The translations under genes and the position numbers were made by a program. Of a DNA stretch of 64,000 bases, positions 17,085 to 47,012 are shown in pieces; position 1 is the first letter of the stretch; each line of letters starts with the position of its first letter. The stretch spans positions 1 through 64,000 of the IMG/VR virus record IMGVR_UViG_3300028393_000019. One strand, written 5' to 3'. Below the pieces are notes generated by a model. The model was given only the letters and a program-made list of their open reading frames with translations, was not told the DNA's origin and ran no database searches.

Positions 17085-17103
17085 CCTATAAATTAATTTA
17101 AGA

Positions 17104-17109
17104 TAAATA
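17104..17109 (+). promoter_or_regulatory. late promoter core (ATAAATA)
   Basis: GATAAATAG upstream of SD GAGGA and the 3701-aa gene. Confidence 0.55.
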
Positions 17110-17129
17110 GACTAGAGGAATAAAATAAA

Positions 17130-23100: not shown

Positions 23101-26100
23101 ACTATGTGTTGACAGTGCCAACTACAACATCGTTGACTGTGTCAACAGTACAATCTGGTCAAGGAACACAAACCACCAGTACATGGACTGCGGCCAACGG
23201 CGTTGCCACTGTGATGTATTATTATAGTGTGGTCAAATGCTTGAGAGACACAACAAACATTGTTAATGCATTGATATATGATTTACAATTCCCAGGCAAT
23301 TACAAATCAATGAGAGCTGTGGAGTTATACAACAATGCTATCACTGGATCAGCCACTAAAAACATGTTCTTGGTACGAAATTCAACTGGTCTACGCAACA
23401 TGACCATGAACGGATTAACCGGTGTGCTGAGTGCCGCTAACGCCAACTTCACACGTCGCCCAACAGCTGGTGCGTATGCAAGTTTAGATCCAGGCTTTGG
23501 ACCAAACGATGCTAACAGCTGGATCTACGCTCGTTCATGCTATACACAAAACTGTACAATGTTTGGTTATGCATGTACCGGTGCTAAGGTTGACGGTGCA
23601 TTACACGCCGGCGGCAACCGTTCTATGGTTGCTAACGACTATACGACTATTATCGGTGACGGCATTGGATACTGGGTAACTGGCAGTAATGCTGTAGCAG
23701 AGCTTGTTTCGGTGTTTAACTACTACGGTTACTCAGGATATTTGAGTGAGTTGGGCGGACGTATACGTGCTACCAACGGTAATAGTTCATATGGTACATA
23801 CGGTGTGATTGCAGAAGGGGTTGATACATTTGAAACACCTATCTATGGCACATTGAACAATAGATATTATCAGGCACAAATAACCAATGTGGTTACAGAT
23901 GCTACTGATAAAGTGTACCGTTTTGAATTTGCCAATGCAGGTAGTAACTACACAAACACTGTTCACACTTTGAGTTCTCCAGGATACGGTACAGTTATTG
24001 TGGCAGACGAATTTAGAGATGCAGGCGTATTTGAAACTCGTTTGATTGACAATGGTGACAGCACTACATCTAGTGTTGGCGGAACAAGCTACTTAACCGC
24101 AACTAATAGTGCTCAGATTAGTGTGATAGGACAACTAGTAGTAGCAGCCACTGACACTGCATTAACTGGAGCCTATGCAGGTATGCGTGTGCAATTGACT
24201 GCTGGTACAGGTGTAGGACAATATGCAAATATTTTAACATTTACTAACGGTAACAAAGTTGCTACAATTGTGAAAGATAGCTTTGCACCATTAATTATTA
24301 CCGCTGCCGCAACAACAAATAATTTGTTTACAGTTGCTAGCACAGCAGGTATGTATACAGGTATGCCAGTGTATGTCTATACTGCATTCAGCTCATTGCT
24401 ATCGGTGCAGACTTTGTATTATGTAAATTCTGCCAACTTTAGTGCAACGCAATTCCAGTTGAGTCTAACATCAGGCGGTGCTGGCTCAGCAGTTAATATT
24501 GGTAGTAACGTGGCAGCGGTCACAGTTACCGTTACAGCAACAGCCGTTATAAACAACTTGATAACAGCCACTAATACACTAACAGCTGGGCAAGCAATAA
24601 CTTTCAACAGTAGTTTTAACGGTATTGATTCTGGTACAACATATTTTGTACTAGCAACAAACCTGACAACCAGTTCATTTGCTGTCGCAAGAGATCCATG
24701 GACCAATGTGGCAGTGACTATCACAGCAACTGGCAGTGCTACATCTACAGGTACTGTTGGGTCAGCAATGTATGCCGCTGGATGGGACCACGTATTGCCA
24801 GGTGTTGCAATCAATAATGGACCAGACTTGACCACTGGATATGTTATTGAACCGCGCATCAGCTACACTGCCCCGGGGTATCTGGCAACTGCTAGAACAC
24901 TCAACAACGCTGTAACAGGTGGCGCAGTGGCGTTTGGCAATGGGCGTTATATCACCGTAGGTACGGGTACAACTACCAACGTGTCAACAGATGGAAAAAC
25001 TTTTGCAAATGGCGGAACACTCACAAGCGCAACTTGGAACGGAGTTGTATATGGTGGTGGTGCTGGTGCTACAGCCACAGCAGTGATTGGCGGACTTGGC
25101 GGAACGGGTGCTGTATTAACCGCAGTGGTTGGTACTGGTGCTTATGCTACACAAATTGTAAGTATAACTATTGTTAGTGGCGGATATAATTATCTTACAC
25201 CTCCGAGCATTGTTATTGTCGGTGGTGGTGGAAGCGGTGCTACAGCCATATGTACTGTGTTGAATGGTGCTATTCAAACAGTGACTTTGAGTGTTAATGG
25301 TTCTGGTTATTCTAGCGCACCAACTGTGACTGCTAATACTTCAATTTTGGCAAGTATCACTGCCAATCAATACGGTCGTAATTATTTTAGTAGTCCACAA
25401 ATCACAGTAAGTCAGCCACAAGGATTAAGCCCAACGGCATATCCGCAAAGTGCTTCGGCAACACAGGGGACATACTATCAAACAGCAGCCGGAAGAATTT
25501 ATCTATGTATAACAGCTGGTACGACAAGTGCTACAATTCCATCATTTGATTATACAACTACGTCTGGTTATACAAATATTCAGAACGGTAGTGCGTACTT
25601 CACTTACATTGCTACACAAGCTCAAGTGGCATCGCCAACATTGACCAATAACGGTGTAAGTGCATTACCACTAAGCGTTGCAGGATACGGCTATACCAGT
25701 ACACCAACAGTGACAATAACTGATACCAGTGCAAAGTTTGTAGCAATAAGCAACAGTGCAAGCACAAGTACAAATACCAGTTACAGTTCAAACAACGGTA
25801 CCAGTTGGACCAACACCACAACCACTGTATTGAACTTGCGTTCACTAGCATATGGCAACGGTGTATATGTGGCAGTGGGCGGCGCAAGCGGTACAGCTAC
25901 CGCAGTATCTACTTCAGATATTGTGAGCGGCTGGACCAATCGCTCATCAAACATCACAGCTCTAGTGTCTGGCTATTATTCAGCAGTTACATACGGCGGA
26001 TCATACTTTGTAGCTGTTCAAAACGGTGCATTGATAACCAGTGTTACGCAAAATGCCAATACATGGACTCAGGGTGCCAACTTACCGTCAGGATTTACAG

Positions 26101-28235
26101 ATGCAGTAAGTATTGCTTATGGTAATAATCGATATGTGGTACTGGGAACAAGTGGCAAGATTGCCTACAGTATCAACAACGGCGGAACACAATCTGTTGC
26201 AGGTTGGACCACGGCACCATCATGTACTGGCACAACCACAAGTGTGTTGTCATCCACATATACTTGGACAGCAATCACATACGGTCAAGGTCAGTTTGTT
26301 GCAGTGGCACAAGGTACTGTGGCAGCAACCAGCTGGGACGGTATCAACTGGTATAGAACAACATTGCCAACCAGCACAAACTGGGGCAGTATAGCATTTG
26401 GCAACCCAATCAGTGCTACATTAGGAGCTCAACCATTGTTTGTTGCAGTGACCACACAAGGTACCACAGCGGCCGCCAGCATTAGAACTGGAACTCAACC
26501 ACTGGGACGCATGAAGGCGGCCAGCGGAGTGATTACAGAAATACGTATGGTTGAACCAGGTAGCGGATTTGCCAAAGGCAACGTTAGTTCAACAGTTGCA
26601 CAAACTACTGTGACAGTCAACTCTAGTAGCGGTACTACAATCACATTGAGTGCAAGCGCCACACTAACAGTTGGAGCACCAATTACATTTGCCAGTGCAG
26701 TTGGATCTATATCAGCCAGTCCTGTAGTTTATTATGTACAAGCAAGTTCAGGTACAAGTTTATCGGTAGCTACAACACCAACAGGCAGTGCGGCAACTGC
26801 GGGAACAACTTCGGCATTGACTGTAGTTGCAACTGTACAACCAGTGTTGGTTGTAGATGATACTACCAACATGCCAACCAGTATTGCCAACAATTATCCA
26901 GTTGAATTTAGTGTAGCCAGCGGTACATTGACAACCAACACCACTTATTATGTGATTGGTTCAAGTGTGGGAGCATCTACATTCCAAGTTACTGCTACAT
27001 CAGGCAGTACAACACCGGTTGCACTGACATCAACTACACCAACTGGTATGATTTACACTGTGGGACCATTGGTTCAACAGTTTGATACCAACAGAGTTAA
27101 AACTGCGGCAACTCGTGTGCGTACTGGAAATGGTATTTTAGGCAATCCAAGTATTACCAACAAAGGTGCAGGCAACGCTACAGGAACTGTATCTACACTT
27201 GGTGATGGATATTCCGACTTGTTCCAAAACAGTGCATATATCAACGTGGCTGGATTGTACAGTATGCCAAGTCCAGGTGCAAACGTTCAGTTTGGTACTA
27301 CATATACTGGTGTTCCTTGGACTGCAAACACAGTGGTTAGAACTGGTGTACAGTTAATTGCAACCAACTCAGTTGTAGTTGGCAGTACAACAACTTATTA
27401 CTACAATGTATATACTGTTTCTAACGGTGGTACTACAGGATCAACTGCTCCGACAAGCACTGGTTCAAGTGTAAGTGATGGTACAGCAACACTAAGCTAT
27501 GTGGGACAAAATCCAAACACTTGGTACAAATTAGTTACTATCAGCAATCAATTGGGAATTGCTGGCAATTACACAGCCACATTCCAAGTGAATCCTGCAC
27601 TGACCACTGCTACAGCAGGTGTACACAACACTACAATCACTACAAGATTGAAATACAGTCAAGTACGCTTGACTGGACATGATTTCTTGTACATTGGTAC
27701 TGGAAATCAAACACAGACCAACTACCCATATGTCAATGCGGCCAACGCGATACAGGCAAATCAACAGTATCCTGTAGCTGGCGGACGTGTGTTCTTTACG
27801 TCAACTGACCAAGACGGTAACTTTAACGTGGGTAACTTGTTTGGAGTTCAACAGTCAACTGGTACTGCTACATTGAATGCCAGTGCGTTTAACTTGGCTG
27901 GTTTGCAGAGTTTGACATTGGGTGCTATTAACTTGGGGGTTGGATCAGCTACTATTACACAATTTAGTACAGATCCATACTTTACAGCCAATAGCGATAA
28001 TATTGTTCCAACACAGAAAGCAATTAAAAGCTATATTACAGCTCAAATTGGTGGCGGATCAAGCAGTTTGAACGTAAATACACTGACAGCTGGACAGGTA
28101 TATATTGCAAACAACTCTATAGGATTGGCAGCAACAGTTACTGGTACAACAACAATTAACGTTACAAGTAAAATGAACTTTACAGGCGGAATAGACGGAG
28201 CACCAGTGGCTTTGATATTCTTTGGACAGAAATAA
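17130..28235 (+). CDS. giant multidomain tail fibre/adhesin, paralogue of 8307..17084
   Basis: 3701 aa; same N-terminus (AEFK[LI]GR), same beta-helix and propeller modules, same C-terminus (RLTGHDFL.IG...GRVFFTSTDQDGNF.VG.LFGVQQ). Confidence 0.75.
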   Translation: MAEFKLGRIKFVYQGPWAQNNAYVVDDVVTVSGKTYICVVSHTSTNSATGFATDLAYNPTNWNLIADGAKWIGAWSNGTYYNVSDQVSYGGVVYQCLTSHTSTASTATITATGFTVFAGTATLTYASQVVQPFLVGSTVTLSGFSPSTTSTPSTVNSTFTVASCTTTQITFAITGTYTVSILGTVSGTSQLGLEQDQSKWVAFASNFNWSQGWSTNYRYKVRDLVTNGGYTYVCNTAHVSANTVALGLEADLSKWDTFNAGIIYRQTWSGSSVTYRLNDVVTYGADLWICTTAHTSTGTVLDVTKFSIFVNGFEFSNSWNSTTNYVIGDMVTYGGYTYTAIQNGNGQTPSTATGYWQPFTTGFNFRGDWSGSNSYRIGDVARVSGYTYVAALDNTVQLVQAIATTVSSDGTRPNQITIAAGITITGASVTSTTATLTYASQSQIPFVAGQTIVVAGVTNTAYNGTFIVTGTPSVTQVQYTLTGSPASSSGGTVSATTANLIVGLPITFGTALGNLLTTGQYYVNTIPDSSHFTVTATQFSGTAFALVSATGTSAGTTNPKPPFTTYWSQLNSGFKWNPTNNSYSAVAGTNIIGSGTSATWNVTAKNTIYTVTLNAGGSGYANSDTIKILGTSLGGLSPANDLTITVTGTSSGVITVFSSTGISVSWSTSVTYVAGDTVLWGVSSYTCVLAHVSATGNRPDNDVTGTYWNLLASGAESSVLTTQGDTFYYGANGPTRLPIGTDGQILRVNNTTPAWQYYGQINNIVYVSPAGVDTLANGQGTTIDKPWATIRYACYQIENGYLNPNASLLLAVNKQFLLKEVSNYVTYTYQASVTGTSGGAFLTANTAGLNVGMPVTFTAQTGSLTLTAAAIPSTTVYYIKAIVANTSFTVASTYGGTALTAAGTGTAVAKYYTSLPTEIERDAGFTIDGFVFDLSHGGTYNTNLNTLLFFNTAGSDYINNFVKYEITQFIGAQTYLLSLIGKILANSAPANNYQALNGISSGSRAIQNTTSVATSSVESVAISTITSLSTILTNAMALGNTSQLPAVVTPATTISVKTGTYNEVLPIVVPSYTAIVGDELRSTIVQPAAANLNLATDKPKSVASLARIQAILPTLLANSTVTATTGNTQTQITTLPAGDTGSQSAVNSVMTGIATVQDMINNGYQATPPFSFTNPTGYNTSFLAGFGDGATQIKNNYTFIKYEVANFLSTNYSTQWTAFGASLQAETLRDVGFILDGLQYDMTYGCNNQSLINGSAYYSLNILQIRASYLPSTVASLQRVAGIISQIVTATSVTATSQTAPYTATQSTSGTAGSAAAAAFAAARVQDVIYWINNGFANTSTSAVTGSIATTAGGTLTVSAVTNGTLVPGMLLTGTGVSTPTYIVNQSTGVTAIASPTLSSGGTTGTNTFVVSSATGILAGQLVTGTNVPAGSYVISTYTAGTTITLVNYWGYPSNFIATGSGTYNFYTAGGTGTYLVSVSQTVSSTTITGNSTITPITSGAYALASTALQTAYTIATARNSEIASDAQVWVQKFYQAYSISTTLTNRDAGLVSAGLAWDLLLQSNFNSIAIGRAYNRLNTSALALLANSNNELVATLGALNFVGYKMKQIVSSGSVIRAQTTIDDMIQSIYGTVSTTLSVATTSTNVLTVGTTTNVLPGMQISFTGLPANITTTATSTTTSTNVINLAATAASLGIVAGQQIYFTGAVVGNLVPNQMYYVINPSASTIQVSNTFGGAAVSLNNATPAATMNVIVNNAGGLWNNYIYYVNTVISGTTLTITSAYKSGTALVINNTVSGMSAVVTINASSQIAGATPGAERNGTLTYDNTQTTVQGSEILRANINFLANEASAYTAANFSGTVTTTATDGTITTSAAHNLKAGDPVNFTATTVVTTVTGTNTNGNITVNSSTGMVVNMPVSFTGSVFGGLSIATTYYIRSISGTTVTLSTAYPASTSLYTPTSTTTGSATMTVGGLFGGLTATNSNTGLTQLYYVLTVPTTTSLTVSTVQSGQGTQTTSTWTAANGVATVMYYYSVVKCLRDTTNIVNALIYDLQFPGNYKSMRAVELYNNAITGSATKNMFLVRNSTGLRNMTMNGLTGVLSAANANFTRRPTAGAYASLDPGFGPNDANSWIYARSCYTQNCTMFGYACTGAKVDGALHAGGNRSMVANDYTTIIGDGIGYWVTGSNAVAELVSVFNYYGYSGYLSELGGRIRATNGNSSYGTYGVIAEGVDTFETPIYGTLNNRYYQAQITNVVTDATDKVYRFEFANAGSNYTNTVHTLSSPGYGTVIVADEFRDAGVFETRLIDNGDSTTSSVGGTSYLTATNSAQISVIGQLVVAATDTALTGAYAGMRVQLTAGTGVGQYANILTFTNGNKVATIVKDSFAPLIITAAATTNNLFTVASTAGMYTGMPVYVYTAFSSLLSVQTLYYVNSANFSATQFQLSLTSGGAGSAVNIGSNVAAVTVTVTATAVINNLITATNTLTAGQAITFNSSFNGIDSGTTYFVLATNLTTSSFAVARDPWTNVAVTITATGSATSTGTVGSAMYAAGWDHVLPGVAINNGPDLTTGYVIEPRISYTAPGYLATARTLNNAVTGGAVAFGNGRYITVGTGTTTNVSTDGKTFANGGTLTSATWNGVVYGGGAGATATAVIGGLGGTGAVLTAVVGTGAYATQIVSITIVSGGYNYLTPPSIVIVGGGGSGATAICTVLNGAIQTVTLSVNGSGYSSAPTVTANTSILASITANQYGRNYFSSPQITVSQPQGLSPTAYPQSASATQGTYYQTAAGRIYLCITAGTTSATIPSFDYTTTSGYTNIQNGSAYFTYIATQAQVASPTLTNNGVSALPLSVAGYGYTSTPTVTITDTSAKFVAISNSASTSTNTSYSSNNGTSWTNTTTTVLNLRSLAYGNGVYVAVGGASGTATAVSTSDIVSGWTNRSSNITALVSGYYSAVTYGGSYFVAVQNGALITSVTQNANTWTQGANLPSGFTDAVSIAYGNNRYVVLGTSGKIAYSINNGGTQSVAGWTTAPSCTGTTTSVLSSTYTWTAITYGQGQFVAVAQGTVAATSWDGINWYRTTLPTSTNWGSIAFGNPISATLGAQPLFVAVTTQGTTAAASIRTGTQPLGRMKAASGVITEIRMVEPGSGFAKGNVSSTVAQTTVTVNSSSGTTITLSASATLTVGAPITFASAVGSISASPVVYYVQASSGTSLSVATTPTGSAATAGTTSALTVVATVQPVLVVDDTTNMPTSIANNYPVEFSVASGTLTTNTTYYVIGSSVGASTFQVTATSGSTTPVALTSTTPTGMIYTVGPLVQQFDTNRVKTAATRVRTGNGILGNPSITNKGAGNATGTVSTLGDGYSDLFQNSAYINVAGLYSMPSPGANVQFGTTYTGVPWTANTVVRTGVQLIATNSVVVGSTTTYYYNVYTVSNGGTTGSTAPTSTGSSVSDGTATLSYVGQNPNTWYKLVTISNQLGIAGNYTATFQVNPALTTATAGVHNTTITTRLKYSQVRLTGHDFLYIGTGNQTQTNYPYVNAANAIQANQQYPVAGGRVFFTSTDQDGNFNVGNLFGVQQSTGTATLNASAFNLAGLQSLTLGAINLGVGSATITQFSTDPYFTANSDNIVPTQKAIKSYITAQIGGGSSSLNVNTLTAGQVYIANNSIGLAATVTGTTTINVTSKMNFTGGIDGAPVALIFFGQK

Positions 28236-28253: not shown

Positions 28254-28574
28254 ATGGCAACAGGAAGATTAGGAACTTTTGCACTGGCAGCTACTACTCT
28301 AACTACAGTGTATACTGTACCGAGTAATAACTACGCAGTGTTTAACGTTTCATTTACAAATACAAACTCTACATCAGTGACTATTCGATTGGCAATAGCA
28401 ACATTGGCTACACCTGCGACCAGTGAATATATCGAGTACGATACAACAATCATCCCCAAGGGTGTTTTTGAACGCAGTGGGCTAGTGGCCAACGGAAACT
28501 TATTAATAGTTGCATATTCCAGCGCCTCTGGTGTAAACGCAAACGTTTACGGCATTGAAACATCTACAGTATAA
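28254..28574 (+). CDS. small beta-sandwich virion protein (paralogue of 2875 and 7351)
   Basis: 106 aa; 'TTVYTVP...VSFTNT...VTIRL...YIEYD..I'; SD GGAG. Confidence 0.65.
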   Translation: MATGRLGTFALAATTLTTVYTVPSNNYAVFNVSFTNTNSTSVTIRLAIATLATPATSEYIEYDTTIIPKGVFERSGLVANGNLLIVAYSSASGVNANVYGIETSTV

Positions 28575-28584
28575 GTGAGATATT

Positions 28585-29352
28585 ATGGCACGTTATAACA
28601 CCGTTAATCCGACATCTGTTTCAAGCGGGGCCGTTACTGTTGGAGCTCCAACCCAAGGTTTAGTTACCACTTTGACAGGGTCATCGGGTTACACTGTAAC
28701 GTTGTCTGCACCAAACTTATTTTCTGGTATATCACAACTATTTTACAATGCCACTGGCGGCAACGTAACAATTGCTTCACCAACTGGCAACATCAAAGGT
28801 CCTGGTTTTACAGCAGCCACCACACAGATTATTCCTGCCAATGCAGTGTATACACTAACATCAGACGGCACTGACTTTATTGTAACCAACAATGAAGGCG
28901 GCCCACAGTTATCATCCACTATCAATGCAACTGGATTATTGACAGCGGCAGCCAACGTGTCTATGACTGGCACTTTGATTCAAACCAGTTCCGCTCAAAC
29001 AATAACCACATCTTATGATTTGGTACACCTAAATTATTTGCAAACTAACTATGGACAGGCTTGGTCAGTAAAAAGTGCAGGTTTTACAGCCACTGCTGGT
29101 GGTAGATATTTTATCGATACTGGAGTCACTGCATTTACCATGACTTTACCATCTAGTCCAGCCTCGGGCGACATGGTACATATTATTGACTATGCTGGAA
29201 CACTCAGTTCCCGTAACTTGACTATTGCTCCCGGTGGTAACAGAATTCAGCGTGTGGCAGATACTATGACAGTATCAACCAACGGTGCCGCATTTGTCCT
29301 ACTGTACTCAGGCGCAGCCAATCCAGGTTGGTTAGTGGCAACAGGTATTTAA
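28585..29352 (+). CDS. tail fibre connector-like protein
   Basis: 255 aa; C-terminal 'FTATAGGRYFIDT...TMTLPSSP.SGD.V.IID.AG....NLTI..GG..I' domain common in T4-like fibre proteins. Confidence 0.6.
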   Translation: MARYNTVNPTSVSSGAVTVGAPTQGLVTTLTGSSGYTVTLSAPNLFSGISQLFYNATGGNVTIASPTGNIKGPGFTAATTQIIPANAVYTLTSDGTDFIVTNNEGGPQLSSTINATGLLTAAANVSMTGTLIQTSSAQTITTSYDLVHLNYLQTNYGQAWSVKSAGFTATAGGRYFIDTGVTAFTMTLPSSPASGDMVHIIDYAGTLSSRNLTIAPGGNRIQRVADTMTVSTNGAAFVLLYSGAANPGWLVATGI

Positions 29353-29364
29353 TAAGGGAATAAC

Positions 29365-30216
29365 ATGGCGTTTGACTATCAAACACTCAAGAACATACGT
29401 ACTGACGCAGTCATTGACGGTACTGTGGCCACTGCTGACTTGTCTGATAACAGTGTCACAGCCACAACAATTGTTGCTGGCAATATTACTGCGGCAAAAC
29501 TTGCTAGCGGAGCCATTGACAACACGTCATCAGTGACCACCGGCACTTTGCCTTACAGTAAAGGGGGTACACAATTAACCAGTTTTCCAGGTGCCAATCA
29601 AGCAATTTACAGTGACGGCGGCAATTTGAGTTTTACCAATCATGGTATTCAAGGACTCAGTGTGTTCACTGGCGGTGGTACATGGAATAGACCAAGCGGA
29701 GTGCGATACATCAGAGTGCAGTGTCAAGCAGGCGCAGGCGGTGGATCAGGACATGGAGAAGGTGGTGGCGCTGGCGGGTACAGTGAACGATTCTTGGATG
29801 TAACTGGTATCAGTTCAGTGACTGTCACCATTGGCGGCGGAGGCGGTGGCACATATTATGCCAACGCAGGCGGCGATGGCGGCGCAAGTTCATTTGGACC
29901 ATACTGCTCTGCATCAGCTGGCCATGGCGCAAATAGACAAAATCAACACTCAGGTGGTGTTAGTGGTGTAGGCTCAGGCGGTGACTTAAACCTACACATG
30001 GGTGGCGGCCTAAGCCACCATGCTTATTCAGCACAAAGCTGTGCAGATACATATTTTGGCGGTGGCGCCCCGAGTAGCCACCCACAAGGCGGACATTTTG
30101 CACATGTGCATCAAGGCCATACTGCTCCGGGAACTGGTGGTGCAGGCGCACACTTCCACGGACATAGAGGATCAGATGGCAGGCCCGGTATTGTTATTGT
30201 TACTAATTACTATTAA
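29365..30216 (+). CDS. Gly/His-rich fibre-tip (polyglycine-type) protein, paralogue 1
   Basis: 283 aa; MAFDYQTLKN start; 'VFTGGGTWNRPSGVRYIRV..QAGAGGG' glycine-rich domain ending GSDGRPGIVIV. Confidence 0.7.
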   Translation: MAFDYQTLKNIRTDAVIDGTVATADLSDNSVTATTIVAGNITAAKLASGAIDNTSSVTTGTLPYSKGGTQLTSFPGANQAIYSDGGNLSFTNHGIQGLSVFTGGGTWNRPSGVRYIRVQCQAGAGGGSGHGEGGGAGGYSERFLDVTGISSVTVTIGGGGGGTYYANAGGDGGASSFGPYCSASAGHGANRQNQHSGGVSGVGSGGDLNLHMGGGLSHHAYSAQSCADTYFGGGAPSSHPQGGHFAHVHQGHTAPGTGGAGAHFHGHRGSDGRPGIVIVTNYY

Positions 30217-30227
30217 TAGAGGCATAT

Positions 30228-31091
30228 ATGGCATTTGATTATCAAACACTTAAAAATTTAGTTGCATCATCGTTTATTGCAAACACTATTACTGGTTCAG
30301 ACATTGGTTCACAGCAGGTTACAACAAACAAATTTGTAGGTACAACTCTGACTGCAAACGAATTTGCCACTAGCTCGGTAGATTTGACATCGGGCACAGT
30401 TACAGGAGTTACTCCGGTATCCAAGGGCGGTACCAGTCTCAGTGGTGTAGGTTCAGCTTACCAGGTTCTAGCAACCAACAGTGCCAATAACGCATTGAAC
30501 TTTGTACCGTCGGGCATCTATAGAATGCAGGTATTCACCAGCAACGCCACATGGACTAGAGCCGCCAACGTGCGCTATATTCACATTCAGCTACAAGCTG
30601 GCGGCGGCGGAGCGTCGGGTCATGGTGAATCAGGAGCCGCAGGCGGATATACCGAGCGTGTGCTTGAAGTGATGCAAAGCGGTATTAATTCTGTGGGTAT
30701 TACCATAGGCGGCCAAGGCGGCGGCACATACTATTCAAGTGCAGGTGGCGATGGTGGTGCAAGCTCATTTGGGCCTTATTGCTCAGCATCAGGCGGGCAT
30801 GGCGCAAATAGACAAAATCAACACAACGGTGGTGTTAGTGGTACTGGATCAGGCGGAGATGTGAATTTGTACCAAGGATCAGGCGGTGGTCACGAACAGC
30901 GTAGTTCAGGCATGGGCGGAAGCACATTCTTCGGCGGGCCAGCACCCAGCGGCCACCCACAAGGCGGACACTTTAGTCACATTCACCAAGGCCATTCAGC
31001 ACCGGGTACAGGCGGCACCAGCGGTTATTTCAGTGGACACAGAGGTTCAGATGGACGTCCAGGAATTTGTGTGATCACGGAATATTATTAA
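30228..31091 (+). CDS. Gly/His-rich fibre-tip protein, paralogue 2
   Basis: 287 aa; same architecture and motifs as paralogue 1. Confidence 0.7.
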   Translation: MAFDYQTLKNLVASSFIANTITGSDIGSQQVTTNKFVGTTLTANEFATSSVDLTSGTVTGVTPVSKGGTSLSGVGSAYQVLATNSANNALNFVPSGIYRMQVFTSNATWTRAANVRYIHIQLQAGGGGASGHGESGAAGGYTERVLEVMQSGINSVGITIGGQGGGTYYSSAGGDGGASSFGPYCSASGGHGANRQNQHNGGVSGTGSGGDVNLYQGSGGGHEQRSSGMGGSTFFGGPAPSGHPQGGHFSHIHQGHSAPGTGGTSGYFSGHRGSDGRPGICVITEYY

Positions 31092-31101
31092 AAGGTAAAT
31101 T

Positions 31102-31956
31102 ATGGCGTTTGACTATCAAACATTAAAAAATATTAATAGTGCCGCAATTACTGACGGTACGTTAGTGACCTCTAATATTGCAAATAGTACCATTTCATCA
31201 GGCAACATTGCCGATGGCAACGTGACTGCGGCAAAAATTAGCAACAGCGCAATCAACTATACTTCAACTATTGTAGCCAATGCCATGCCAATCAGCAAGG
31301 GTGGTACTGCACTTACTAGTGTAGGCGGAGCCAATACAGCACTTAGAACCAACAGCAGTGCCAACGGTTACGAGTATGCCAAACTTGGTTTTTCAAGTAT
31401 GCAGGTATTTACCGGTGGCGGTACATGGAACAGACCAGCTGGTGTCAGATTCATCAAGGTCAAATGTCAAGCTGGTGGTGGTGGTGCAAGCGGGCACGGA
31501 GAATCAGGAGCTGCCGGTGGATACAGTGAACGTGTATTGGATGTAACAGGTATTGGTTCAGTGACTGTTACTGTTGGGGGTGGTGGTGGCGGCACATACT
31601 ATTCAGGTGCAGGTGGCGACGGCGGCGCCAGTTCATTTGGCCCTTACTGCTCAGCATCAGCTGGTCATGGGGCAAATAGACAAAATCAACACTCAGGCGG
31701 AGTTAGTGGTAGTGGCTCAGGAGGCGATCTAAACATTCATACTGGATCAGGTGGCTCACATCACCACTCATTTGGACCCGGCGGCACCAGTCACTTTGGT
31801 GGCCCAGCACCCAGCGGTCATCCACAAGGTGGACATTTTAGTCACAATCATCAAGGTCATGCGGCTCCAGGTTCTGGGGGCACAGGCGGTTATTTCACTG
31901 GACACAGGGGTTCAGATGGAAGACCAGGAATTATAGTCATCGAGGAGTATAAATAA
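31102..31956 (+). CDS. Gly/His-rich fibre-tip protein, paralogue 3
   Basis: 284 aa; same architecture and motifs as paralogues 1 and 2. Confidence 0.7.
   Translation: MAFDYQTLKNINSAAITDGTLVTSNIANSTISSGNIADGNVTAAKISNSAINYTSTIVANAMPISKGGTALTSVGGANTALRTNSSANGYEYAKLGFSSMQVFTGGGTWNRPAGVRFIKVKCQAGGGGASGHGESGAAGGYSERVLDVTGIGSVTVTVGGGGGGTYYSGAGGDGGASSFGPYCSASAGHGANRQNQHSGGVSGSGSGGDLNIHTGSGGSHHHSFGPGGTSHFGGPAPSGHPQGGHFSHNHQGHAAPGSGGTGGYFTGHRGSDGRPGIIVIEEYK
31948..31955 (+). promoter_or_regulatory. late promoter TATAAATA overlapping the end of paralogue 3
   Basis: Exact T4 late consensus 5 nt upstream of the ATG at 31961; could also be coincidental coding sequence (TAT AAA TAA). Confidence 0.45.
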
Positions 31957-31960
31957 CATT

Positions 31961-32455
31961 ATGAAAAAAGCACTAGTAACATATCAAGGTTATGTCCAGG
32001 ACATTAGAGATCCAGGCGAGCATTTTGAGATCTACGAAGGTCCAGATGCCACATTTGTATGGGTAGACGCCCCAGACGAAATCCAAAAAGAATGGACACT
32101 TGAATGGAGTCCCAGCCGTCAAGAAATGATATGGATTGAACGAGAAGGCGCATTTACCAGTAACGAAGTTGCTCGTAAAGTGGCATACGGTGAAATAGGA
32201 GCTCAATTAGGTCAGATATTTGACGACATCAAAGAGCACGGAGCATTAAGTGCTGAAACAAGTGTGTGGTTCGCTCACATTCAAAACGTAAAAAATCTAA
32301 TTGAAAAACCAGTTTACGAAGTACCGATCACAATGGAAGAAATGATGATTCGTGCGAATACTATGGAGCCACATGTTGATAATCCACATCAAATATCTAC
32401 TCCTGAATTACCAGCATGGAAACGTTATCCTGGATGGAAAGGATTTGGACAATAA
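31961..32455 (+). CDS. putative tail fibre assembly chaperone
   Basis: 164 aa directly after the fibre-tip genes; 'ARKVAYGEIGAQLGQIFDDI...WFAHIQNVK' resembles the R..Y..I.EQL...W...I..VK pattern of fibre-associated chaperone-like proteins. Confidence 0.5.
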   Translation: MKKALVTYQGYVQDIRDPGEHFEIYEGPDATFVWVDAPDEIQKEWTLEWSPSRQEMIWIEREGAFTSNEVARKVAYGEIGAQLGQIFDDIKEHGALSAETSVWFAHIQNVKNLIEKPVYEVPITMEEMMIRANTMEPHVDNPHQISTPELPAWKRYPGWKGFGQ

Positions 32456-32472
32456 TATCTAGTATATTATAC

Positions 32473-32520: not shown

Positions 32521-32528
32521 TATAAATA
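32521..32528 (+). promoter_or_regulatory. T4-type late promoter TATAAATA driving the enzyme island
   Basis: Exact consensus between the terminator and the SD (AAAGGA) of the first halogenase. Confidence 0.75.
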
Positions 32529-32552
32529 CTCGGCAATAGCAAAGGATAAATT

Positions 32553-34169
32553 ATGCAGATAAAAACGGTAATGATTGTTGGTGGTGGTAGTTCTGGCTGG
32601 ATGACTGCGGCCGCATTATCAAAACTATGCCCTCATTTAAAAGTGTCATTGGTAGAGTCTATAAAGATAGGTACTATTGGAGTGGGTGAAAGTACTCTTG
32701 GACATATCAATAAATTTTTTGGTATGCTGGGATTGAAGGATGAAGACTGGATGGCAGAATGCAATGCCACTTACAAAAATTCTATCCGCTTTACCAACTT
32801 TAGAGAAAACGACGGCACTCATTTTGAATATCCGTTCAGTGCGGGGCTGGATTTTACTGACAAGCCTGCGGGCACTGGTGCATGGTCAGAACTGGCAACG
32901 CTATATCCCGAAGAATACACTCCTGAGACTTTTGCAGAATTTTATTGTACTGGTAACACGATGCTGGCCAAATACAACAAACAGACCCGCGATGAAAAAG
33001 GTATTTTGCGTAACTATGATTTTGCATGGGATACTGCATATCATCTTGATGCACAATTGCTAGGACAGTATTTGAAAAATAAAATTGCAATTCCCAACGG
33101 AGTTACACATCTTGATGCAGAGATTCATTCTTATAAAAAAGATTATCTTGGCAATTTAACGGATATTTTGTGTGTTGATGGTACTGTACTCCGTGCAGAT
33201 TTGTTTATTGACTGTACTGGATTTAAATCAATGCTGTTGGAAGGATGGATGGGATCAGAATTTAGATCGTTTGACAAGTATTTGGCAAATGACAGTGCAT
33301 GGGCCTGCCGTATTCCTTATGAAGATCGCGAAAAAGAAATGCACAATATTACTGACTGCCATGCACTTGGTAATGGATGGGTATGGAACATTCCCTTGTG
33401 GAATCGCATAGGAACAGGCTATTGCTATTCATCCAAGTTTACCACAGACGAAGAAGCCAAGCGTGAGTTTCGCAATCACTTGGCAACTACTGGATCAAAA
33501 GAACGTGCAGAAAATGCAGAAATGATGCATGTTAAGATCAAACACGGCCGCAGACGTCGTGCATGGGTGCAGAATGTGGTAGGAGTTGGACTGAGTTATG
33601 GATTTGTCGAACCACTTGAGTCAACTGGATTGCTGACTACACATGAAAATATTATCAAACTTGTGGAGCAGTTGAATCGCCGTCAGGGATACATAACTCG
33701 TACAGAAATTGAAGGCTTTAACTTTTCTGTTGAGAACGAAGTATTACGTTTTAGAGATTTCGTTAGCCAACACTATGCACTTTCTCAAAGAACTGATACT
33801 CCATATTGGCGCTGGTGCACCCAGTTGCATGAGTATTGCCCAGACCAGATGGGAGACTACATGTTGACTCAGGCACAGTATCCCAACTTGATGGCTAACA
33901 TTGTTGGTAATCAACGCTATTACGGTGAGTATGTGGGCAATATGTTTATTGCGGGTGGTATGGGGGTTAAGTCTATCTCGACCAAAGAACTAATCTTTTT
34001 TAATGGTACTAGACAGGCTAAAACGCTCAAACAAGAAGAAATTGGATACACTAAACGTCGATACGAAGAATATAGAGATTATGTAATTGATTACGTGAAA
34101 ACATTACCAAGTCATTATGCATTCTTGAAGAAAGAAATCTATGGCGGAAAAGATGACCACGCTGTGTAA
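32553..34169 (+). CDS. flavin-dependent halogenase, tryptophan halogenase family
   Basis: GGGSSG FAD motif, IGVGEST, catalytic-Lys motif CNATYKNSIRF, FIDCTGF, GWVWNIP, FVEPLESTG. Confidence 0.92.
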   Translation: MQIKTVMIVGGGSSGWMTAAALSKLCPHLKVSLVESIKIGTIGVGESTLGHINKFFGMLGLKDEDWMAECNATYKNSIRFTNFRENDGTHFEYPFSAGLDFTDKPAGTGAWSELATLYPEEYTPETFAEFYCTGNTMLAKYNKQTRDEKGILRNYDFAWDTAYHLDAQLLGQYLKNKIAIPNGVTHLDAEIHSYKKDYLGNLTDILCVDGTVLRADLFIDCTGFKSMLLEGWMGSEFRSFDKYLANDSAWACRIPYEDREKEMHNITDCHALGNGWVWNIPLWNRIGTGYCYSSKFTTDEEAKREFRNHLATTGSKERAENAEMMHVKIKHGRRRRAWVQNVVGVGLSYGFVEPLESTGLLTTHENIIKLVEQLNRRQGYITRTEIEGFNFSVENEVLRFRDFVSQHYALSQRTDTPYWRWCTQLHEYCPDQMGDYMLTQAQYPNLMANIVGNQRYYGEYVGNMFIAGGMGVKSISTKELIFFNGTRQAKTLKQEEIGYTKRRYEEYRDYVIDYVKTLPSHYAFLKKEIYGGKDDHAV

Positions 34170-34953
34170 AACTCTGTTTGGGTGGATGCGTAGAGAATCA
34201 AAACCTTTTATTCGCTTTTACTCGCTAGAGCCAGGTACTGCAACTCTATTTCCTATTGTAAAATCATCATCTATCGATCGTAATTTTTTATCAAATATTC
34301 AACCGGGTGATCAACCAGAAACACTATCTTCAAAAAACTGCCCCGGCATTAAGAAGATTGTGTCAAGCGGTTGGATAGTACCTGCCCCAGCAGACTTTAC
34401 AATAAACACCAACGGTGACGGAATTAGTTTTGACTGGGCTCAACCGTATCGATTCAGTAAAATCACTCCTGGCATGGAAGCGTATGTCAACAGTCATACT
34501 CGCAGTCAAACGGAACCATTGCTCGATGACGAAACTTCTACATTGAAAACTGTAGTGAAAGTTGAAACTCCTTGGCGAATTGAAGCAAGTGACGATACAG
34601 TACTGTTACTAATGCCAGTGACATACAACAACGAAAGCAGATTCTCGGCAGCTACTGGAATATTAGATCCCAAATACGGACACGTTGTTAATATTCAATT
34701 ATTCTGGAAAGTGTTAAATGGAGCAACTACCGTAAAAGCAGGAACACCGTTGTGTCAAATTATTCCAATTTCAAGAAAAGCCTTGTCCGGATCGTTTTAT
34801 GATGTTACAATAGATACAGCTACTGATAATGACACTAAAAAAGAACACGAATTTAACTATGCATCAAACTGTGCATTTTTAGCAAATGATTCGCTGTCTT
34901 CAAGACTAAGCCGTGTAATAACTATTTTAAATAAGTACAAGACTAAAGGATAA
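34141..34953 (+). CDS. DUF6065/dUTPase-fold-like protein (start may be 34153)
   Basis: 'KNCPGI...GWIVPAPADF...KVETPWRI...GILD...VKAGTPLCQIIP'; paralogue of 47600..48430. Confidence 0.55.
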   Translation: MAEKMTTLCKTLFGWMRRESKPFIRFYSLEPGTATLFPIVKSSSIDRNFLSNIQPGDQPETLSSKNCPGIKKIVSSGWIVPAPADFTINTNGDGISFDWAQPYRFSKITPGMEAYVNSHTRSQTEPLLDDETSTLKTVVKVETPWRIEASDDTVLLLMPVTYNNESRFSAATGILDPKYGHVVNIQLFWKVLNGATTVKAGTPLCQIIPISRKALSGSFYDVTIDTATDNDTKKEHEFNYASNCAFLANDSLSSRLSRVITILNKYKTKG

Positions 34954-34956
34954 CCT

Positions 34957-35208
34957 ATGAACTACAAAGAACAACTTCAAACCATCATCGTAAAAATTAC
35001 CGAGCAAAAAGAAGGTGCTAGCGCAGAACTTGCTAAATTGGAAGAAGAGTTTGCTAACGTGAAATTAAATCCGTATGGCATCACAGCCATTGATTTTGCT
35101 AAACGTCAAGAACTCAGCACAGATGTTCTAAAAATGGAAGGCGTACTCATGGGTTTACAACTTGCATTAGAAACATTTGACGGAGCTCAGCAAGGTGATC
35201 CAGCTTAA
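34957..35208 (+). CDS. small helical/coiled-coil hypothetical protein
   Basis: 83 aa, SD AAAGGA, heptad-like E/K/L pattern. Confidence 0.6.
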   Translation: MNYKEQLQTIIVKITEQKEGASAELAKLEEEFANVKLNPYGITAIDFAKRQELSTDVLKMEGVLMGLQLALETFDGAQQGDPA

Positions 35209-35782
35209 GAATGGCGGCTTATTTTTATTTCCTCCAGATGTTTGGAAATTCAAGTACGATTTTAATTTTGAAGAATTAAAACCAAAGATAGATCATTTGT
35301 TGAACATTACTGAGAATAACTCAGAACTTGAATCAGGCGATGCTCTATCTACTGTTGCATTGGACGAAAGTATGCAACCACATTCGTGGGCGGAGTTGGC
35401 ACATTTTCAAAACTGGTTAGGAGAAAAAATTGCTCTTATCCGGAGAGAAAATGCATTCAACTACACACGTTCTGAAGTATCCAGATCATGGGTCAATCGT
35501 CACGGGTTTGGCGGCGAAACAATTGAACACAATCATAATCAAACTACATTCGTAGTAACATGTTATCTTCAGTTACCACCTGATTCGGGATTTATTGAAT
35601 TCAAAGACCCGCTGGAATATCATAAAACTCTTTACCCTATAATTCCTGAAGAAAGTTCTTATCAGGCAGTGCCTTGCGAAACTAATGATGTATTGATATT
35701 TCCTGGATATATGCGTCATAGAGTGCAACAAAATAAAAACAAGACCGACGAACGACTTGTTCTAACGCTCAATATCAAATGA
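35177..35782 (+). CDS. Fe(II)/2OG oxygenase, TIGR02466-like
   Basis: SWVN...EHNH, LIFPGYMRHRV, terminal R.VLT.N; exact start uncertain (TTG). Confidence 0.8.
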   Translation: MTELSKVIQLKNGGLFLFPPDVWKFKYDFNFEELKPKIDHLLNITENNSELESGDALSTVALDESMQPHSWAELAHFQNWLGEKIALIRRENAFNYTRSEVSRSWVNRHGFGGETIEHNHNQTTFVVTCYLQLPPDSGFIEFKDPLEYHKTLYPIIPEESSYQAVPCETNDVLIFPGYMRHRVQQNKNKTDERLVLTLNIK

Positions 35783-36576
35783 GAGAATTCAAAGTTTGCT
35801 ATCCTGATGCCAACAACATCAATAAAGTTCTTAAACTCAAACCCATTAAGGACTTCAATGTCAAGTATGTAAAACTTGACAAGGAAATCGGGTATTGGGT
35901 GTCGGATCACCCGTTTATTGACAACGGTTTTGATATCTTTAGAGAATTAATAGCTTCATTTCCTATACAGAAAGACAATAATCATCCTGATAATATGGAT
36001 CCCAACCCATTTGATACCATACATGTACCCGAGTGGGTCAGTGGAAATATTGTCTCAGTGGTTGAAGAATTTTATCGCATGAGCAACACAAAAACTATCT
36101 TTGTACCGCAACTGCATGAATGGGGTAATGTTTATTTCAAAGCAAAAGCCCGCCCCATAACCTGCTGGCGAATTCCACATATTGATTATATACATGGCTT
36201 GGTTGCAAATTTATGGTTTACAGATCATGATATTACAGACAGCGGAACCAAATTGTATCACTACACCGGCAAGATGTATAACGAAATTTACGACTTTCAG
36301 CAAGATACTGATCATCCAAGATACAAAGAATGGCAACAGTTGGCTGACAAACCTACTCGCGCAGATGCTTGGTTTAATATTCCCGATGAAGAATTACGAA
36401 CTTGGGGATTTGAATGTGTAGGCATTGCCCCAACCAAAGAAGGCACAATGACCTGGTACAATTCAAATGTTTGCCACCTTGCATATATTTCTGAAAAAGT
36501 AGATTTTAGATGGAGTCATACATTTGCATTTAGCCATGAAACACACCCTAGTACTATGGGAGATTTGTTTAGATGA
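35779..36576 (+). CDS. Fe(II)/2OG oxygenase-like (DUF6445-like)
   Basis: RIPHID (HxD), SGTKLY, distal 'YNSNVCHLA', RWS. Confidence 0.65.
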   Translation: MREFKVCYPDANNINKVLKLKPIKDFNVKYVKLDKEIGYWVSDHPFIDNGFDIFRELIASFPIQKDNNHPDNMDPNPFDTIHVPEWVSGNIVSVVEEFYRMSNTKTIFVPQLHEWGNVYFKAKARPITCWRIPHIDYIHGLVANLWFTDHDITDSGTKLYHYTGKMYNEIYDFQQDTDHPRYKEWQQLADKPTRADAWFNIPDEELRTWGFECVGIAPTKEGTMTWYNSNVCHLAYISEKVDFRWSHTFAFSHETHPSTMGDLFR

Positions 36577-42396: not shown

Positions 42397-42402
42397 TATT
42401 TA
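42397..42402 (-). promoter_or_regulatory. late promoter core (CTAAATA)
   Basis: Overlaps the stop of the 514-aa halogenase, upstream of the SD of the 71-aa gene. Confidence 0.45.
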
Positions 42403-46932: not shown

Positions 46933-47012
46933 AACCAGTTCTTCTCGAAGTTTTTTTGTAGTGTAATATATATCATTGTACACGCAGATGTTCTGCAGAC
47001 CTGAAAGGAACT

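What the first reader, a model, noticed from the sequence alone, without database searches (positions are those of the whole stretch)
29365..31956. Three tandem Gly/His-rich fibre-tip paralogues with invariant His loops and one variable loop: likely substrates or metal-binding adhesin
Seen: three ~285-aa genes share MAFDYQTLKN and Gly runs separated by near-invariant loops (SGHGE, GTYY, GHGANRQNQH, HPQGGHFxHxHQGH, GHRGSDGRPG). One loop differs (LSHHAYSAQSCA / GHEQRSSGMG / SHHHSFGPG). Known: Gly runs with exposed loops describe polyglycine-II sandwich adhesins such as T-even gp38; His clusters bind metal in T4 fibre tips; ROXA/NO66-type JmjC enzymes hydroxylate His; beta-hydroxy-His/Asp are siderophore iron ligands. 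Inference: a possibly heterotrimeric tip whose His/Tyr/Asn/Gln loops are hydroxylated or halogenated by the neighbouring island to form a metal-chelating or siderophore-mimicking receptor-binding surface.
Basis: partly seen in the sequence, partly recalled or inferred. Interest (0 to 1): 0.82.

Follow-up and report, generated by a model that had tools for sequence, protein, structure and literature searches.

The report
Three His-tipped glycine-rich tail-fibre paralogues
Three neighbouring genes of a T4-like cyanophage encode short tail-fibre (host-recognition) proteins of a known glycine-rich fold, unusual in that their outer tips are histidine-rich and strongly conserved and always lie next to a large block of protein- or metabolite-modifying enzymes, a link that is suggestive but unproven.

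Summary
Three tandem ORFs (283, 287 and 284 aa; 58-64% identical) share the N-terminus MAFDYQTLKN and Gly runs separated by His/Tyr-rich loops. They belong to Pfam PF21722 (Gly_rich_2) and PHROG 863. By sequence profile and predicted fold they are homologues of the solved trimeric tail fibre gp24 of cyanophage Pam3: a TNF-like beta-sandwich followed by a six-loop polyglycine domain. The 164-aa gene directly downstream has the size, position and two-domain layout of the Pam3 fibre chaperone gp25, but homology was not shown.

The three copies are old and separately conserved (three orthologous clades in 49 distinct trios). Their loop tips are under strong purifying selection, not hypervariable. 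His-rich tips occur only in the clade that lies next to the halogenase/2OG-oxygenase island. The trio was followed by p164 in 67/67 related contigs with enough flank and by a halogenase in 54/54. That clade is a single lineage, the wider family lacks the island, and each protein has only one Trp.

Verdict: fibre-tip identity is well supported. Metal binding is plausible. Heterotrimer formation and enzymatic modification are untested. This is a new variant of a known fibre kind.

The parts
29365..30216 (+). Gly-rich fibre paralogue 1 (283 aa). Docking motif at residues 1-10, variable shaft to about residue 95, then a TNF-like sandwich and a six-loop Gly-rich domain. 14 His in the C-terminal domain.
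30228..31091 (+). Gly-rich fibre paralogue 2 (287 aa), same architecture. 11 His in the C-terminal domain.
31102..31956 (+). Gly-rich fibre paralogue 3 (284 aa). AF2 model has pLDDT above 90 for residues about 70-284. Best fold matches are Pam3 fibre gp24, Bxb1 tail-tip chains and the ALK/LTK TNF-like plus Gly-rich domain.
31961..32455 (+). p164 (Syn9 gp40 family): candidate fibre chaperone. Five-strand beta-sandwich (residues 1-60) followed by a helical domain (68-155). Always lies directly after the last Gly-rich gene.
31948..31955 (+). TATAAATA, a T4-type late-promoter-like motif ending 5 nt before the p164 start codon.
32521..32528 (+). TATAAATA, a late-promoter-like motif ending 24 nt before the halogenase start codon.
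8307..28235 (+). Two giant tail-fibre genes (2925 and 3701 aa, PHROG 9851) upstream. They are part of the same late fibre block.
28254..29352 (+). p106 and p255, small fibre-module proteins that precede the trio in all related loci.
32553..34169 (+). Flavin-dependent (Trp-type) halogenase. GxGxxG, WxWxIP and the Lys motif are intact. It is the first gene of the enzyme island.
34141..42158 (+). Array of 13 tightly packed genes. Eight match Pfam: 2OG-Fe(II) oxygenases (PF13759, PF13640), a JmjC_2 protein and two DUF6445 proteins. Five have no Pfam match. Adjacent to the fibre module; a functional link is not shown.
42400..47603 (.). Three more halogenase paralogues on the - strand and one more 2OG oxygenase on the + strand.

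Best explanation
The three genes encode short tail-fibre (receptor-binding) proteins of a T4-like, Kyanoviridae-type myovirus.

Each protein has four parts. A 10-residue N-terminal motif, M[AP]F[DN]YQ[ST]LK, is shared by all three copies and probably docks them to one virion site. A fast-evolving shaft of about 85 residues follows. Then comes a TNF-like beta-sandwich. Last is a distal domain of six long Gly-rich hairpin loops packed as a polyglycine lattice, as in Pam3 gp24.

The hairpin apices carry the motifs SGHGES, TYYS, GANRQNQH, the paralogue-specific loop, GHPQGGHFxHxHQGH and GHRGSD. Together they would form a His/Tyr/Asn/Gln/Arg-rich distal face. Because that face is under strong purifying selection, it most likely binds something invariant: structural or functional metal ions, and/or a conserved surface component of the host (LPS in the characterised relatives). 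The paralogue-specific loop would give each copy its own specificity.

The downstream 164-aa protein most likely acts as the folding and trimerisation chaperone and is not kept in the virion, as for Pam3 gp25.

Shown here: family membership, predicted fold, orthology of the three copies, the selection pattern and the gene linkage. Inferred: the trimeric state, the position of the His residues at the distal face, metal or receptor binding, and the chaperone role.
For: - Family: Pfam PF21722 above cut-off for all three; PHROG 863.
- Homology to a solved fibre: a 105-sequence profile hits Pam3 gp24 at E 1.8e-7 over the whole TNF-like plus Gly-rich region. The AF2 model (pLDDT 85; C-terminal domain mostly above 90) matches 7ypx_A at E 2e-7 (TM 0.50/0.56), Bxb1 tail-tip chains at E 4e-6, and ALK/LTK GRD entries.
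- Pam3 gp24 is a virion fibre trimer with six Gly-rich loops and a 162-aa chaperone encoded downstream (PMC9608196).
- gp24 homologues of Klebsiella phages bind LPS, and host-range mutations map to the Gly-rich domain (PMC12671077).
- In the wider family the domain is always C-terminal, in proteins of 200-1258 aa.
- Three orthologous clades, 48/49 each, support at least 0.98.
- dN/dS is 0.07-0.12 in the C-terminal domain against 0.37-0.40 in the shaft, with synonymous sites saturated.
- The N-terminal motif is conserved in all copies of 73 loci.
- The midpoints of the six non-strand segments of the model coincide with the His/Tyr motifs.
- p164 follows the last Gly gene in 67/67 loci. It also follows it in three loci that have no enzymes nearby (L099, L109, L113).
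- The p164 model is a beta-sandwich plus helical domain, with weak BFVD matches to tail fibre assembly proteins (E 0.01).
Against: - No direct evidence that any of the three proteins is in the virion. I found no proteome record for the Syn9 or S-CREM1 homologues.
- Public annotation calls the family 'tail fiber assembly'.
- Conserved tips are the opposite of the hypervariable tips described for Pam3 gp24 and S16 gp38, so a simple strain-specific adhesin role is doubtful.
- p164 has no sequence or fold match to Pam3 gp25 in the PDB.
- The N-terminal 70 residues are modelled with low confidence and resemble nothing else in the window, so the attachment site is unknown.
Confidence: 0.75

Rival explanations
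1. One reading: the tips of the three proteins are substrates of the adjacent island. JmjC and 2OG oxygenases would hydroxylate His, Arg, Asn, Asp or Pro residues, and flavin halogenases would halogenate aromatic residues. The result would be a modified, metal-chelating or siderophore-like receptor-binding surface.
For: - Adjacency without exception in close relatives: halogenase 54/54 and at least three island families 45/45.
- The same holds in cultured phages of at least six different genera (Syn9, S-CREM1, S-RIM44, S-WAM1, P-TIM40, S-SZBM1), and by record coordinates in Syn10, Sf-FP1, Sf-CH3 and P-RSM6.
- Adjacency persists although the internal order of the island varies (L088 and L123).
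- A PF21722 protein also sits next to 2OG oxygenases in HTVC008M and in L093.
- The C-terminal domain has 3-7% His in island-linked proteins, against a median of 0.7% (maximum 2.0%) in 42 domain instances with no such enzymes nearby.
- Invariant tips would suit enzyme recognition.
- Late-promoter-like motifs lie before p164 and the halogenase, and the genes share one strand with tiny gaps.
- The JmjC protein is of the MINA/NO66 clade (PMC2938197; PF08007), whose characterised members hydroxylate protein His or Arg (general knowledge).
- Iyer et al. predicted that tail-collar and Gly-rich proteins are hydroxylase substrates in some bacterial operons.
Against: - No modification has been observed.
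- All island-linked proteins form one clade, so the His/island correlation is a single evolutionary event.
- Each protein has one Trp, in the GTW strand of the sandwich, although the window has four halogenases.
- 2OG oxygenases and halogenases occupy the structural-gene region of marine T4-like phages in other arrangements too: between the terminase genes in HTVC008M and beside sbcC in S-B64. Adjacency may therefore reflect inherited genome layout.
- The published reading of the Syn9 cluster is secondary-metabolite synthesis (PMC2938197).
- p164, not the island, tracks the Gly gene where the two are separated.
Confidence: 0.15
2. The three paralogues co-assemble 1:1:1 into one heterotrimeric fibre tip, rather than forming three different homotrimeric fibres.
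For: - Three copies are kept as separate orthologous lineages in fixed order in 77 of 83 loci.
- All three share the same N-terminal motif and nearly the same length within a genome, while lengths differ between genomes: 283-287 here, 266-269 in S-WAM1 and P-TIM40, 252-254 in S-RIM44.
- A three-copy state is seen in at least four lineages that do not group together in the tree.
Against: - Pam3 gp24 is a homotrimer (PMC9608196).
- Relatives function with one copy (L088, L123) or two (S-WAM1, S-SZBM1, Syn9).
- The shaft, which would have to mediate specific co-assembly, is the least conserved part.
- No multimer prediction could be run.
Confidence: 0.3
3. The proteins are non-structural fibre-assembly factors, as the 'tail fiber assembly' label implies (in the manner of T4 gp38), and are absent from the finished virion.
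For: - PHROG 863 label and RefSeq annotation of the Syn9, S-WAM1, P-TIM40 and S-RIM44 homologues.
- The position after the large fibre genes mirrors T4 gene 38.
Against: - The label is an annotation, not a test.
- No match to Caudo_TAP or T4 gp38 families in Pfam.
- Homology is to a fibre seen in the Pam3 virion by cryo-EM and mass spectrometry and to tail-tip chains of Bxb1.
- In the wider family the domain is the C-terminal end of long fibre proteins.
- A separate chaperone candidate (p164) lies next door.
Confidence: 0.08

Closest known systems
Tail fibre gp24 of myocyanophage Pam3 (PDB 7YPX, 7YFW) with its chaperone gp25
   Same: - Similar length (280 versus 283-287 aa).
- TNF-like sandwich followed by six Gly-rich loops.
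- Profile E 1.8e-7 and Foldseek E 2e-7.
- A gene of about 162-164 aa directly downstream, with an N-terminal beta-sandwich and a C-terminal helical domain.
   Different: - The N-terminus here is a short conserved motif plus a non-helical shaft, not a long helical bundle.
- Three diverged copies instead of one.
- Tips are His-rich (11-14 His) and conserved rather than hypervariable.
- p164 shows no detectable homology to gp25.
- Pam3 has no reported enzyme island next to the fibre gene.
Syn9 gp38/gp39 with gp40, and homologues in S-CREM1, S-RIM44, S-WAM1, P-TIM40 and S-SZBM1 (PHROG 863)
   Same: - Same C-terminal domain (up to 64% identity) with the same His motifs.
- Same p164/gp40 partner.
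- Same downstream halogenase and dioxygenase cluster.
   Different: - Those start with an Mtd_N-type N-terminus (MSTLKV...); the window clade starts M[AP]F[DN]YQ.
- Copy number ranges from 1 to 3.
- They are uncharacterised, and labelled 'tail fiber assembly', 'collagen-like protein' or 'hypothetical'.
T-even adhesin gp38 (Salmonella phage S16, T2, T6)
   Same: [quoted passage not shown]
- The gene follows the large distal fibre gene.
   Different: - No sequence or fold match was found here.
- The middle domain is TNF-like rather than a beta-helix.
- gp38 is a monomer capping gp37 and has hypervariable segments, whereas here the loops are invariant.
Extracellular TNF-like plus glycine-rich domain of ALK/LTK receptor kinases (PDB 7NX0, 7LS0, 7LIR)
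   Same: The combination of a TNF-like sandwich and a polyglycine-II lattice (Foldseek E 2.5e-3 to 1e-2).
   Different: - Remote structural resemblance only (TM about 0.25).
- No hit to the ALK/LTK glycine-rich-domain Pfam family was reported.
- Eukaryotic cytokine-binding function.
HxH iron sites of the T4 gp37 fibre needle, and the 'Ferrojan Horse' idea of iron-bearing marine phage fibres
   Same: - One to three HxH motifs per protein.
- A dense His cluster at a fibre tip of an aquatic phage.
   Different: - Different fold.
- Metal binding is not shown.
- The His residues are in loop apices of a Gly-rich domain, not along a triple beta-helix axis.

Membership tests
Pfam PF21722 Gly_rich_2 / Pam3 gp24-type TNF-like plus Gly-rich fibres | Match to the family model above its curated cut-off | tested here: met
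   40.9, 33.3 and 32.1 bits against a cut-off of 24.3, covering profile positions 4-224 of 226
Pfam PF21722 Gly_rich_2 / Pam3 gp24-type TNF-like plus Gly-rich fibres | TNF-like beta-sandwich whose strands extend into six Gly-rich loops | tested here: met
   AF2 model with pLDDT above 90 over most of the domain. Strands are separated by six long non-strand Gly-rich segments. Foldseek hits 7ypx_A at E 2e-7. The profile aligns across the whole region of gp24. This rests on a prediction, not an experiment.
Pfam PF21722 Gly_rich_2 / Pam3 gp24-type TNF-like plus Gly-rich fibres | Homotrimer present in the virion | not testable with these tools
   No multimer prediction was available and no proteome record was found
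Pam3 gp25 / Tfa-type intermolecular fibre chaperone (for p164) | Encoded directly after the fibre gene; N-terminal beta-sandwich plus C-terminal helical trimerisation domain | tested here: met
   A 4-nt gap after paralogue 3. Present in 67/67 loci. The model has five strands (residues 2-59) and helices at 68-155.
Pam3 gp25 / Tfa-type intermolecular fibre chaperone (for p164) | Detectable homology to gp25, Mu Tfa or Caudo_TAP | tested here: not met
   No Pfam hit. phmmer against the PDB gave nothing relevant. Foldseek against the PDB gave no hit below E 0.79. BFVD gave only weak 'tail fiber assembly' matches at E 0.01-0.1.
T-even gp38 adhesin | Homologous gp37-binding N-domain and beta-helix middle domain | tested here: not met
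   No gp38 family among the Pfam hits. PDB 6F45 is not among the 50 listed Foldseek matches.
T-even gp38 adhesin | Hypervariable segments between conserved Gly-rich motifs | tested here: not met
   Loop entropy is close to zero within each orthologue group. dN/dS is 0.07-0.12.
Substrate of a co-encoded modifying-enzyme cluster (RiPP-like or hydroxylated structural protein) | Conserved gene neighbourhood with the enzymes in independent lineages | tested here: inconclusive
   Adjacency is invariable within one clade and is also seen in HTVC008M and L093. It is absent from 42 domain instances in other lineages.
Substrate of a co-encoded modifying-enzyme cluster (RiPP-like or hydroxylated structural protein) | Modified residues observed | not testable with these tools
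   Needs mass spectrometry of virion protein
Metal-binding fibre tip (T4 gp37 HxH type) | His motifs positioned to coordinate a metal | tested here: inconclusive
   HxH motifs at residues 247, 263 and 265 (copy 1), 251 (copy 2), and 220 and 248 (copy 3). The geometry could not be examined.

The most novel reading that the evidence does not exclude
In a whole clade of aquatic T4-like phages, the fibre tip is a dedicated, invariant His/Tyr/Arg-rich scaffold. The late-expressed neighbouring battery of JmjC and 2OG oxygenases and flavin halogenases would modify it after translation. The product would be a chemically elaborated, metal-chelating receptor-binding surface: a ribosomally made, enzyme-tailored 'warhead' on a virion. 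The three paralogues would possibly form one heterotrimer.
Probability: 0.12. Interest if true: 0.9.

Novelty: new variant of a known kind. Interest (0 to 1): 0.5.

Why it matters
Receptor-binding proteins of T4-like cyanophages are largely unassigned, although these phages are a major cause of picocyanobacterial mortality. This work names a concrete candidate module: the Gly-rich fibres plus the gp40-family chaperone. That module is present in many cultured phages (Syn9, S-WAM1, P-TIM40 and others).

It also shows that the tip of this fibre is conserved and His-rich, unlike textbook adhesins, which points to a conserved ligand or a bound metal. This bears on the 'Ferrojan Horse' proposal that marine phage fibres carry iron.

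Finally, it gives the long-unexplained Syn9-type cluster of about ten dioxygenases and several halogenases a testable candidate substrate encoded next door. If modification were confirmed, it would to my knowledge be the first enzyme-tailored phage receptor-binding surface. If refuted, the secondary-metabolite reading stands and the fibre assignment is still useful for annotation.

Tried and rejected
- Megablast of 28000-33000 against GenBank phages found no match. The phage has no close cultured relative.
- A three-sequence profile against the PDB gave nothing. The 105-sequence profile was needed.
- p164 against the PDB by sequence and by fold showed no relation to Pam3 gp25. hhalign of the p164 family against HTVC008M gp066 also found no relation.
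- An N-terminal (residues 1-70) profile of the trio against the window's giant fibres, p106, p255 and other structural ORFs gave no hit. The shaft is therefore not built from the giant fibres' repeat, and the docking partner stays unknown.
- My first classification of L089-L094 as 'no enzymes nearby' was wrong. PHROG and Pfam searches showed a fused 2OG oxygenase right after the Gly gene. I then rebuilt the enzyme profiles.
- The look-up of encoding contigs for distant homologues returned contigs of only about 2 kb. A scan with the 753-aa relative P0164 returned loci without the Gly domain.
- Literature searches for Syn9 virion proteomics and transcript timing found nothing usable in the held library. 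S-CREM1 supplementary tables do not say whether ORF67 was in the virion proteome.
- The count of TATAAATA in the window is not above chance (2 found, 4.7 expected). Only its placement before start codons is notable.
- Recent gene conversion as the cause of loop invariance is rejected, because synonymous sites are saturated.
Full report
**Setting.** The window is the first 64 kb of IMG/VR contig IMGVR_UViG_3300028393_000019 (265,680 bp). It comes from a T4-like myovirus: a gp15-type tail sheath stabiliser is encoded at 48861-50327, and two giant tail-fibre genes of 2925 and 3701 aa (PHROG 9851) lie at 8307-28235. It has no close cultured relative at the DNA level. Its protein relatives are cyanophages of the Kyanoviridae.

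**The observation.** Three + strand ORFs (29365-30216, 30228-31091, 31102-31956) encode proteins of 283, 287 and 284 aa.
- They are 58% and 64% identical to the first copy, with an invariant MAFDYQTLKN start and invariant loops between the Gly runs.
- All three pass the curated threshold of Pfam PF21722 Gly_rich_2 over residues of about 104-284 and match PHROG 863 at E 1e-47 to 1e-56.

**What the proteins are.**
- A library-wide profile search found 3533 relatives at E up to 0.001. The Gly-rich domain is always at the C-terminal end, in proteins of 200 to 1258 aa. That is the position expected of a fibre tip.
- An AlphaFold2 model of paralogue 3, built on a 105-sequence alignment, is confident for residues of about 70-284 (mean pLDDT 85).
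- Foldseek against the PDB puts the cyanophage Pam3 fibre first (7ypx_A, E 2e-7, TM 0.50/0.56). Tail-tip chains of mycobacteriophage Bxb1 follow (E 4e-6), and then the TNF-like plus glycine-rich domain of ALK/LTK.
- The same 105-sequence profile finds Pam3 gp24 by sequence alone (E 1.8e-7), aligned from the first sandwich strand to the C-terminal IVxEY strand.
- Pam3 gp24 is a 280-aa virion fibre. It is a trimer with an N-terminal docking domain, a TNF-like sandwich and a distal domain of six Gly-rich loops (12 Gly-rich motifs in a four-layer lattice). Its distal apices are proposed to bind the receptor (PMC9608196).
- gp24 homologues of Klebsiella phages have been shown to bind LPS, with host-range mutations inside the Gly-rich domain (PMC12671077).

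In the model of paralogue 3, the six long non-strand segments (about 124-140, 158-176, 186-203, 214-232, 233-256 and 257-276) have at their midpoints SGHGES, TYYS, GANRQNQH, SHHHSF, GHPQGGHFSHNHQGH and GHRGSD. By analogy with Pam3, these are the distal apices. This is an inference, because I had no access to the model coordinates.

**The neighbour p164.** The 164-aa ORF at 31961-32455 starts 4 nt after paralogue 3.
- It belongs to the Syn9 gp40 family and has no Pfam match.
- Its model (pLDDT 89) is a five-strand beta-sandwich (residues 2-59) followed by a helical domain (68-155). That is the layout described for the 162-aa Pam3 chaperone gp25, which is likewise encoded directly after the fibre gene.
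- Homology was not demonstrated. There was no PDB match by sequence or fold, and only weak BFVD matches to 'tail fiber assembly' proteins (E 0.01).
- Gene linkage is strong. p164 lies within 200 nt of the last Gly-rich gene in 67 of 67 related loci with enough flank and in every cultured relative examined.
- It also accompanies a Gly-rich gene in three loci that have no halogenase or oxygenase nearby (L099, L109, L113).

p164 therefore belongs to the fibre module, not to the enzyme island.

**Evolution of the trio.**
- In 83 IMG/VR loci, 77 carry three copies. Forty-nine distinct complete trios were aligned.
- The copies fall into three orthologous clades (48 of 49 each, support at least 0.98). 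The triplication is therefore old and each copy is individually retained.
- Within each orthologue group, variation is concentrated in residues 11-95. The Gly-rich domain, including the paralogue-specific loop, is almost invariant.
- Synonymous sites are saturated in both halves (pS about 0.7). dN/dS is 0.07-0.12 in the C-terminal domain and 0.37-0.40 in the shaft. The invariance is therefore purifying selection, not recent gene conversion.
- The N-terminal motif M[AP]F[DN]YQ[ST]LK is kept in all three copies across 73 loci. It occurs nowhere else in the window.
- More distant relatives (Syn9, S-WAM1, P-TIM40, L123) instead begin MSTLKV..., a Pfam Mtd_N domain. The docking module has therefore been exchanged.
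- A tree of the C-terminal domain shows that the multi-copy state groups by lineage: the window clade, the L086 group, S-RIM44, P-TIM40 and S-WAM1/S-SZBM1. This fits repeated duplication or within-genome homogenisation.

**The enzyme island.**
- Downstream lie a flavin halogenase (32553-34169) with intact GxGxxG, WxWxIP and Lys motifs, then 13 tightly packed genes. Eight of these match Pfam: five 2OG-Fe(II) oxygenases, a JmjC_2 protein and two DUF6445 proteins.
- Three more halogenases follow on the other strand, and one more oxygenase on the + strand.
- The Syn9 counterpart (ten tandem dioxygenases, two halogenases and a dUTPase-fold protein) was described in 2010 and read as a secondary-metabolite pathway. 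Its JmjC protein was placed in the MINA/NO66 clade (PMC2938197). No paper in the held library links it to fibres.

**Evidence for a link between fibres and island.**
- Adjacency is invariable: halogenase 54/54, and at least three island families 45/45.
- The arrangement is also found in Syn9, S-CREM1, S-RIM44, S-WAM1, P-TIM40 and S-SZBM1. By coordinates it holds in Syn10, Sf-FP1, Sf-CH3 and P-RSM6 as well.
- Adjacency is kept even where the island's internal order differs (L088, L123).
- A PF21722 protein also sits beside 2OG oxygenases in pelagiphage HTVC008M and in the L093 group.
- The C-terminal domain contains 3-7% His in island-linked proteins. In 42 domain instances without such neighbours, including many in bacterial genomes, the median is 0.7% and the maximum 2.0%.
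- NATAAATA motifs, the T4-type late-promoter core, occur ten times in the window. Seven of them lie 5-33 nt before a start codon, including those of the 3701-aa fibre, p164 and the halogenase. In 46 of 67 related loci the motif precedes the halogenase.

**Evidence against a link.**
- The island-linked proteins form a single clade, so the His/island correlation counts as one event.
- Each protein has a single Trp, in the GTW strand of the sandwich.
- Halogenases and oxygenases occur in other places among the structural genes of marine T4-like phages (HTVC008M; S-B64), so adjacency may be inherited layout.
- The fold clearly does not need the enzymes.
- No modification has been seen.

**Conclusion.** I am confident that these are Pam3-gp24-type fibre-tip proteins with a dedicated chaperone candidate. 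They are a variant of that kind in three respects: an ancient, conserved triplication; a distinct N-terminal docking motif; and invariant, His-rich apices.
- A conserved ligand is implied. Metal binding is the simplest reading of 11-14 His and 1-3 HxH motifs per tip, and it connects with the 'Ferrojan Horse' idea. It is not shown.
- The heterotrimer is open.
I give it roughly one chance in seven.

Noticed in passing
L107 (Pelagibacter phage HTVC008M) 141-1031 and 2031-4904: gp065 is a PF21722 Gly_rich_2 protein (E 6.7e-18). It is annotated as hypothetical and lies next to five 2OG-oxygenase genes on the opposite strand. The fibre/2OG neighbourhood therefore extends beyond cyanophages.
   Followed up: partly
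L093 9410-12002 (same in L089-L094): A T4-like contig in which a His-poor Gly_rich_2 protein is followed at once by a 390-aa fusion of two 2OG-oxygenase-like halves (PHROG 2954 + 61; PF13640).
   Followed up: partly
window 42400-46983 (- strand): Three further flavin halogenase paralogues. The 514-aa copy lacks both WxWxIP and the Lys motif, and the 517-aa copy lacks WxWxIP. They may have other substrates or be inactive.
   Followed up: partly
window 17102, 31948, 32521, 53676, 57942, 60252 (+) and 51799 (-): NATAAATA motifs lie 5-33 nt upstream of start codons (7 of the 10 occurrences in the window). They look like this phage's late promoters.
   Followed up: partly
L002 (S-CREM1) 11185-11985; L001 (Syn9) 12528-13842: The first Gly-rich copy of S-CREM1 is split into two ORFs (a frameshift, a stop or a sequencing error). 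Syn9 gp39 carries a partial internal duplication of the Gly-rich domain.
   Followed up: no
L108, L109, L123 (genome contigs): MAG contigs assigned to Acidimicrobiaceae, Thaumarchaeota and Marinovum carry cyanophage-type Gly/p164 modules, and L108 carries the whole island. They are probably phage contigs binned with cellular genomes.
   Followed up: no
window 34141-34953 and 35779-36576: p270 and p265 have no Pfam match but are conserved island members in every related locus. The S-CREM1 counterpart of p270 is annotated as a dUTPase, and Iyer et al. 2010 describe a dUTPase-fold protein with a conserved Cys in the Syn9 cluster.
   Followed up: no
window 28585-29352: The C-terminal 100 residues of p255 match the N-terminal region (positions about 96-180) of many tail and tail-spike PHROG families of more than 1000 aa. 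It may be an adaptor that carries other fibres.
   Followed up: no
L096 (P-TIM40) 7691-9280: gp043 (530 aa), annotated as hypothetical, has a full Gly_rich_2 domain plus about 260 extra C-terminal residues that contain a second short Gly-rich match.
   Followed up: no
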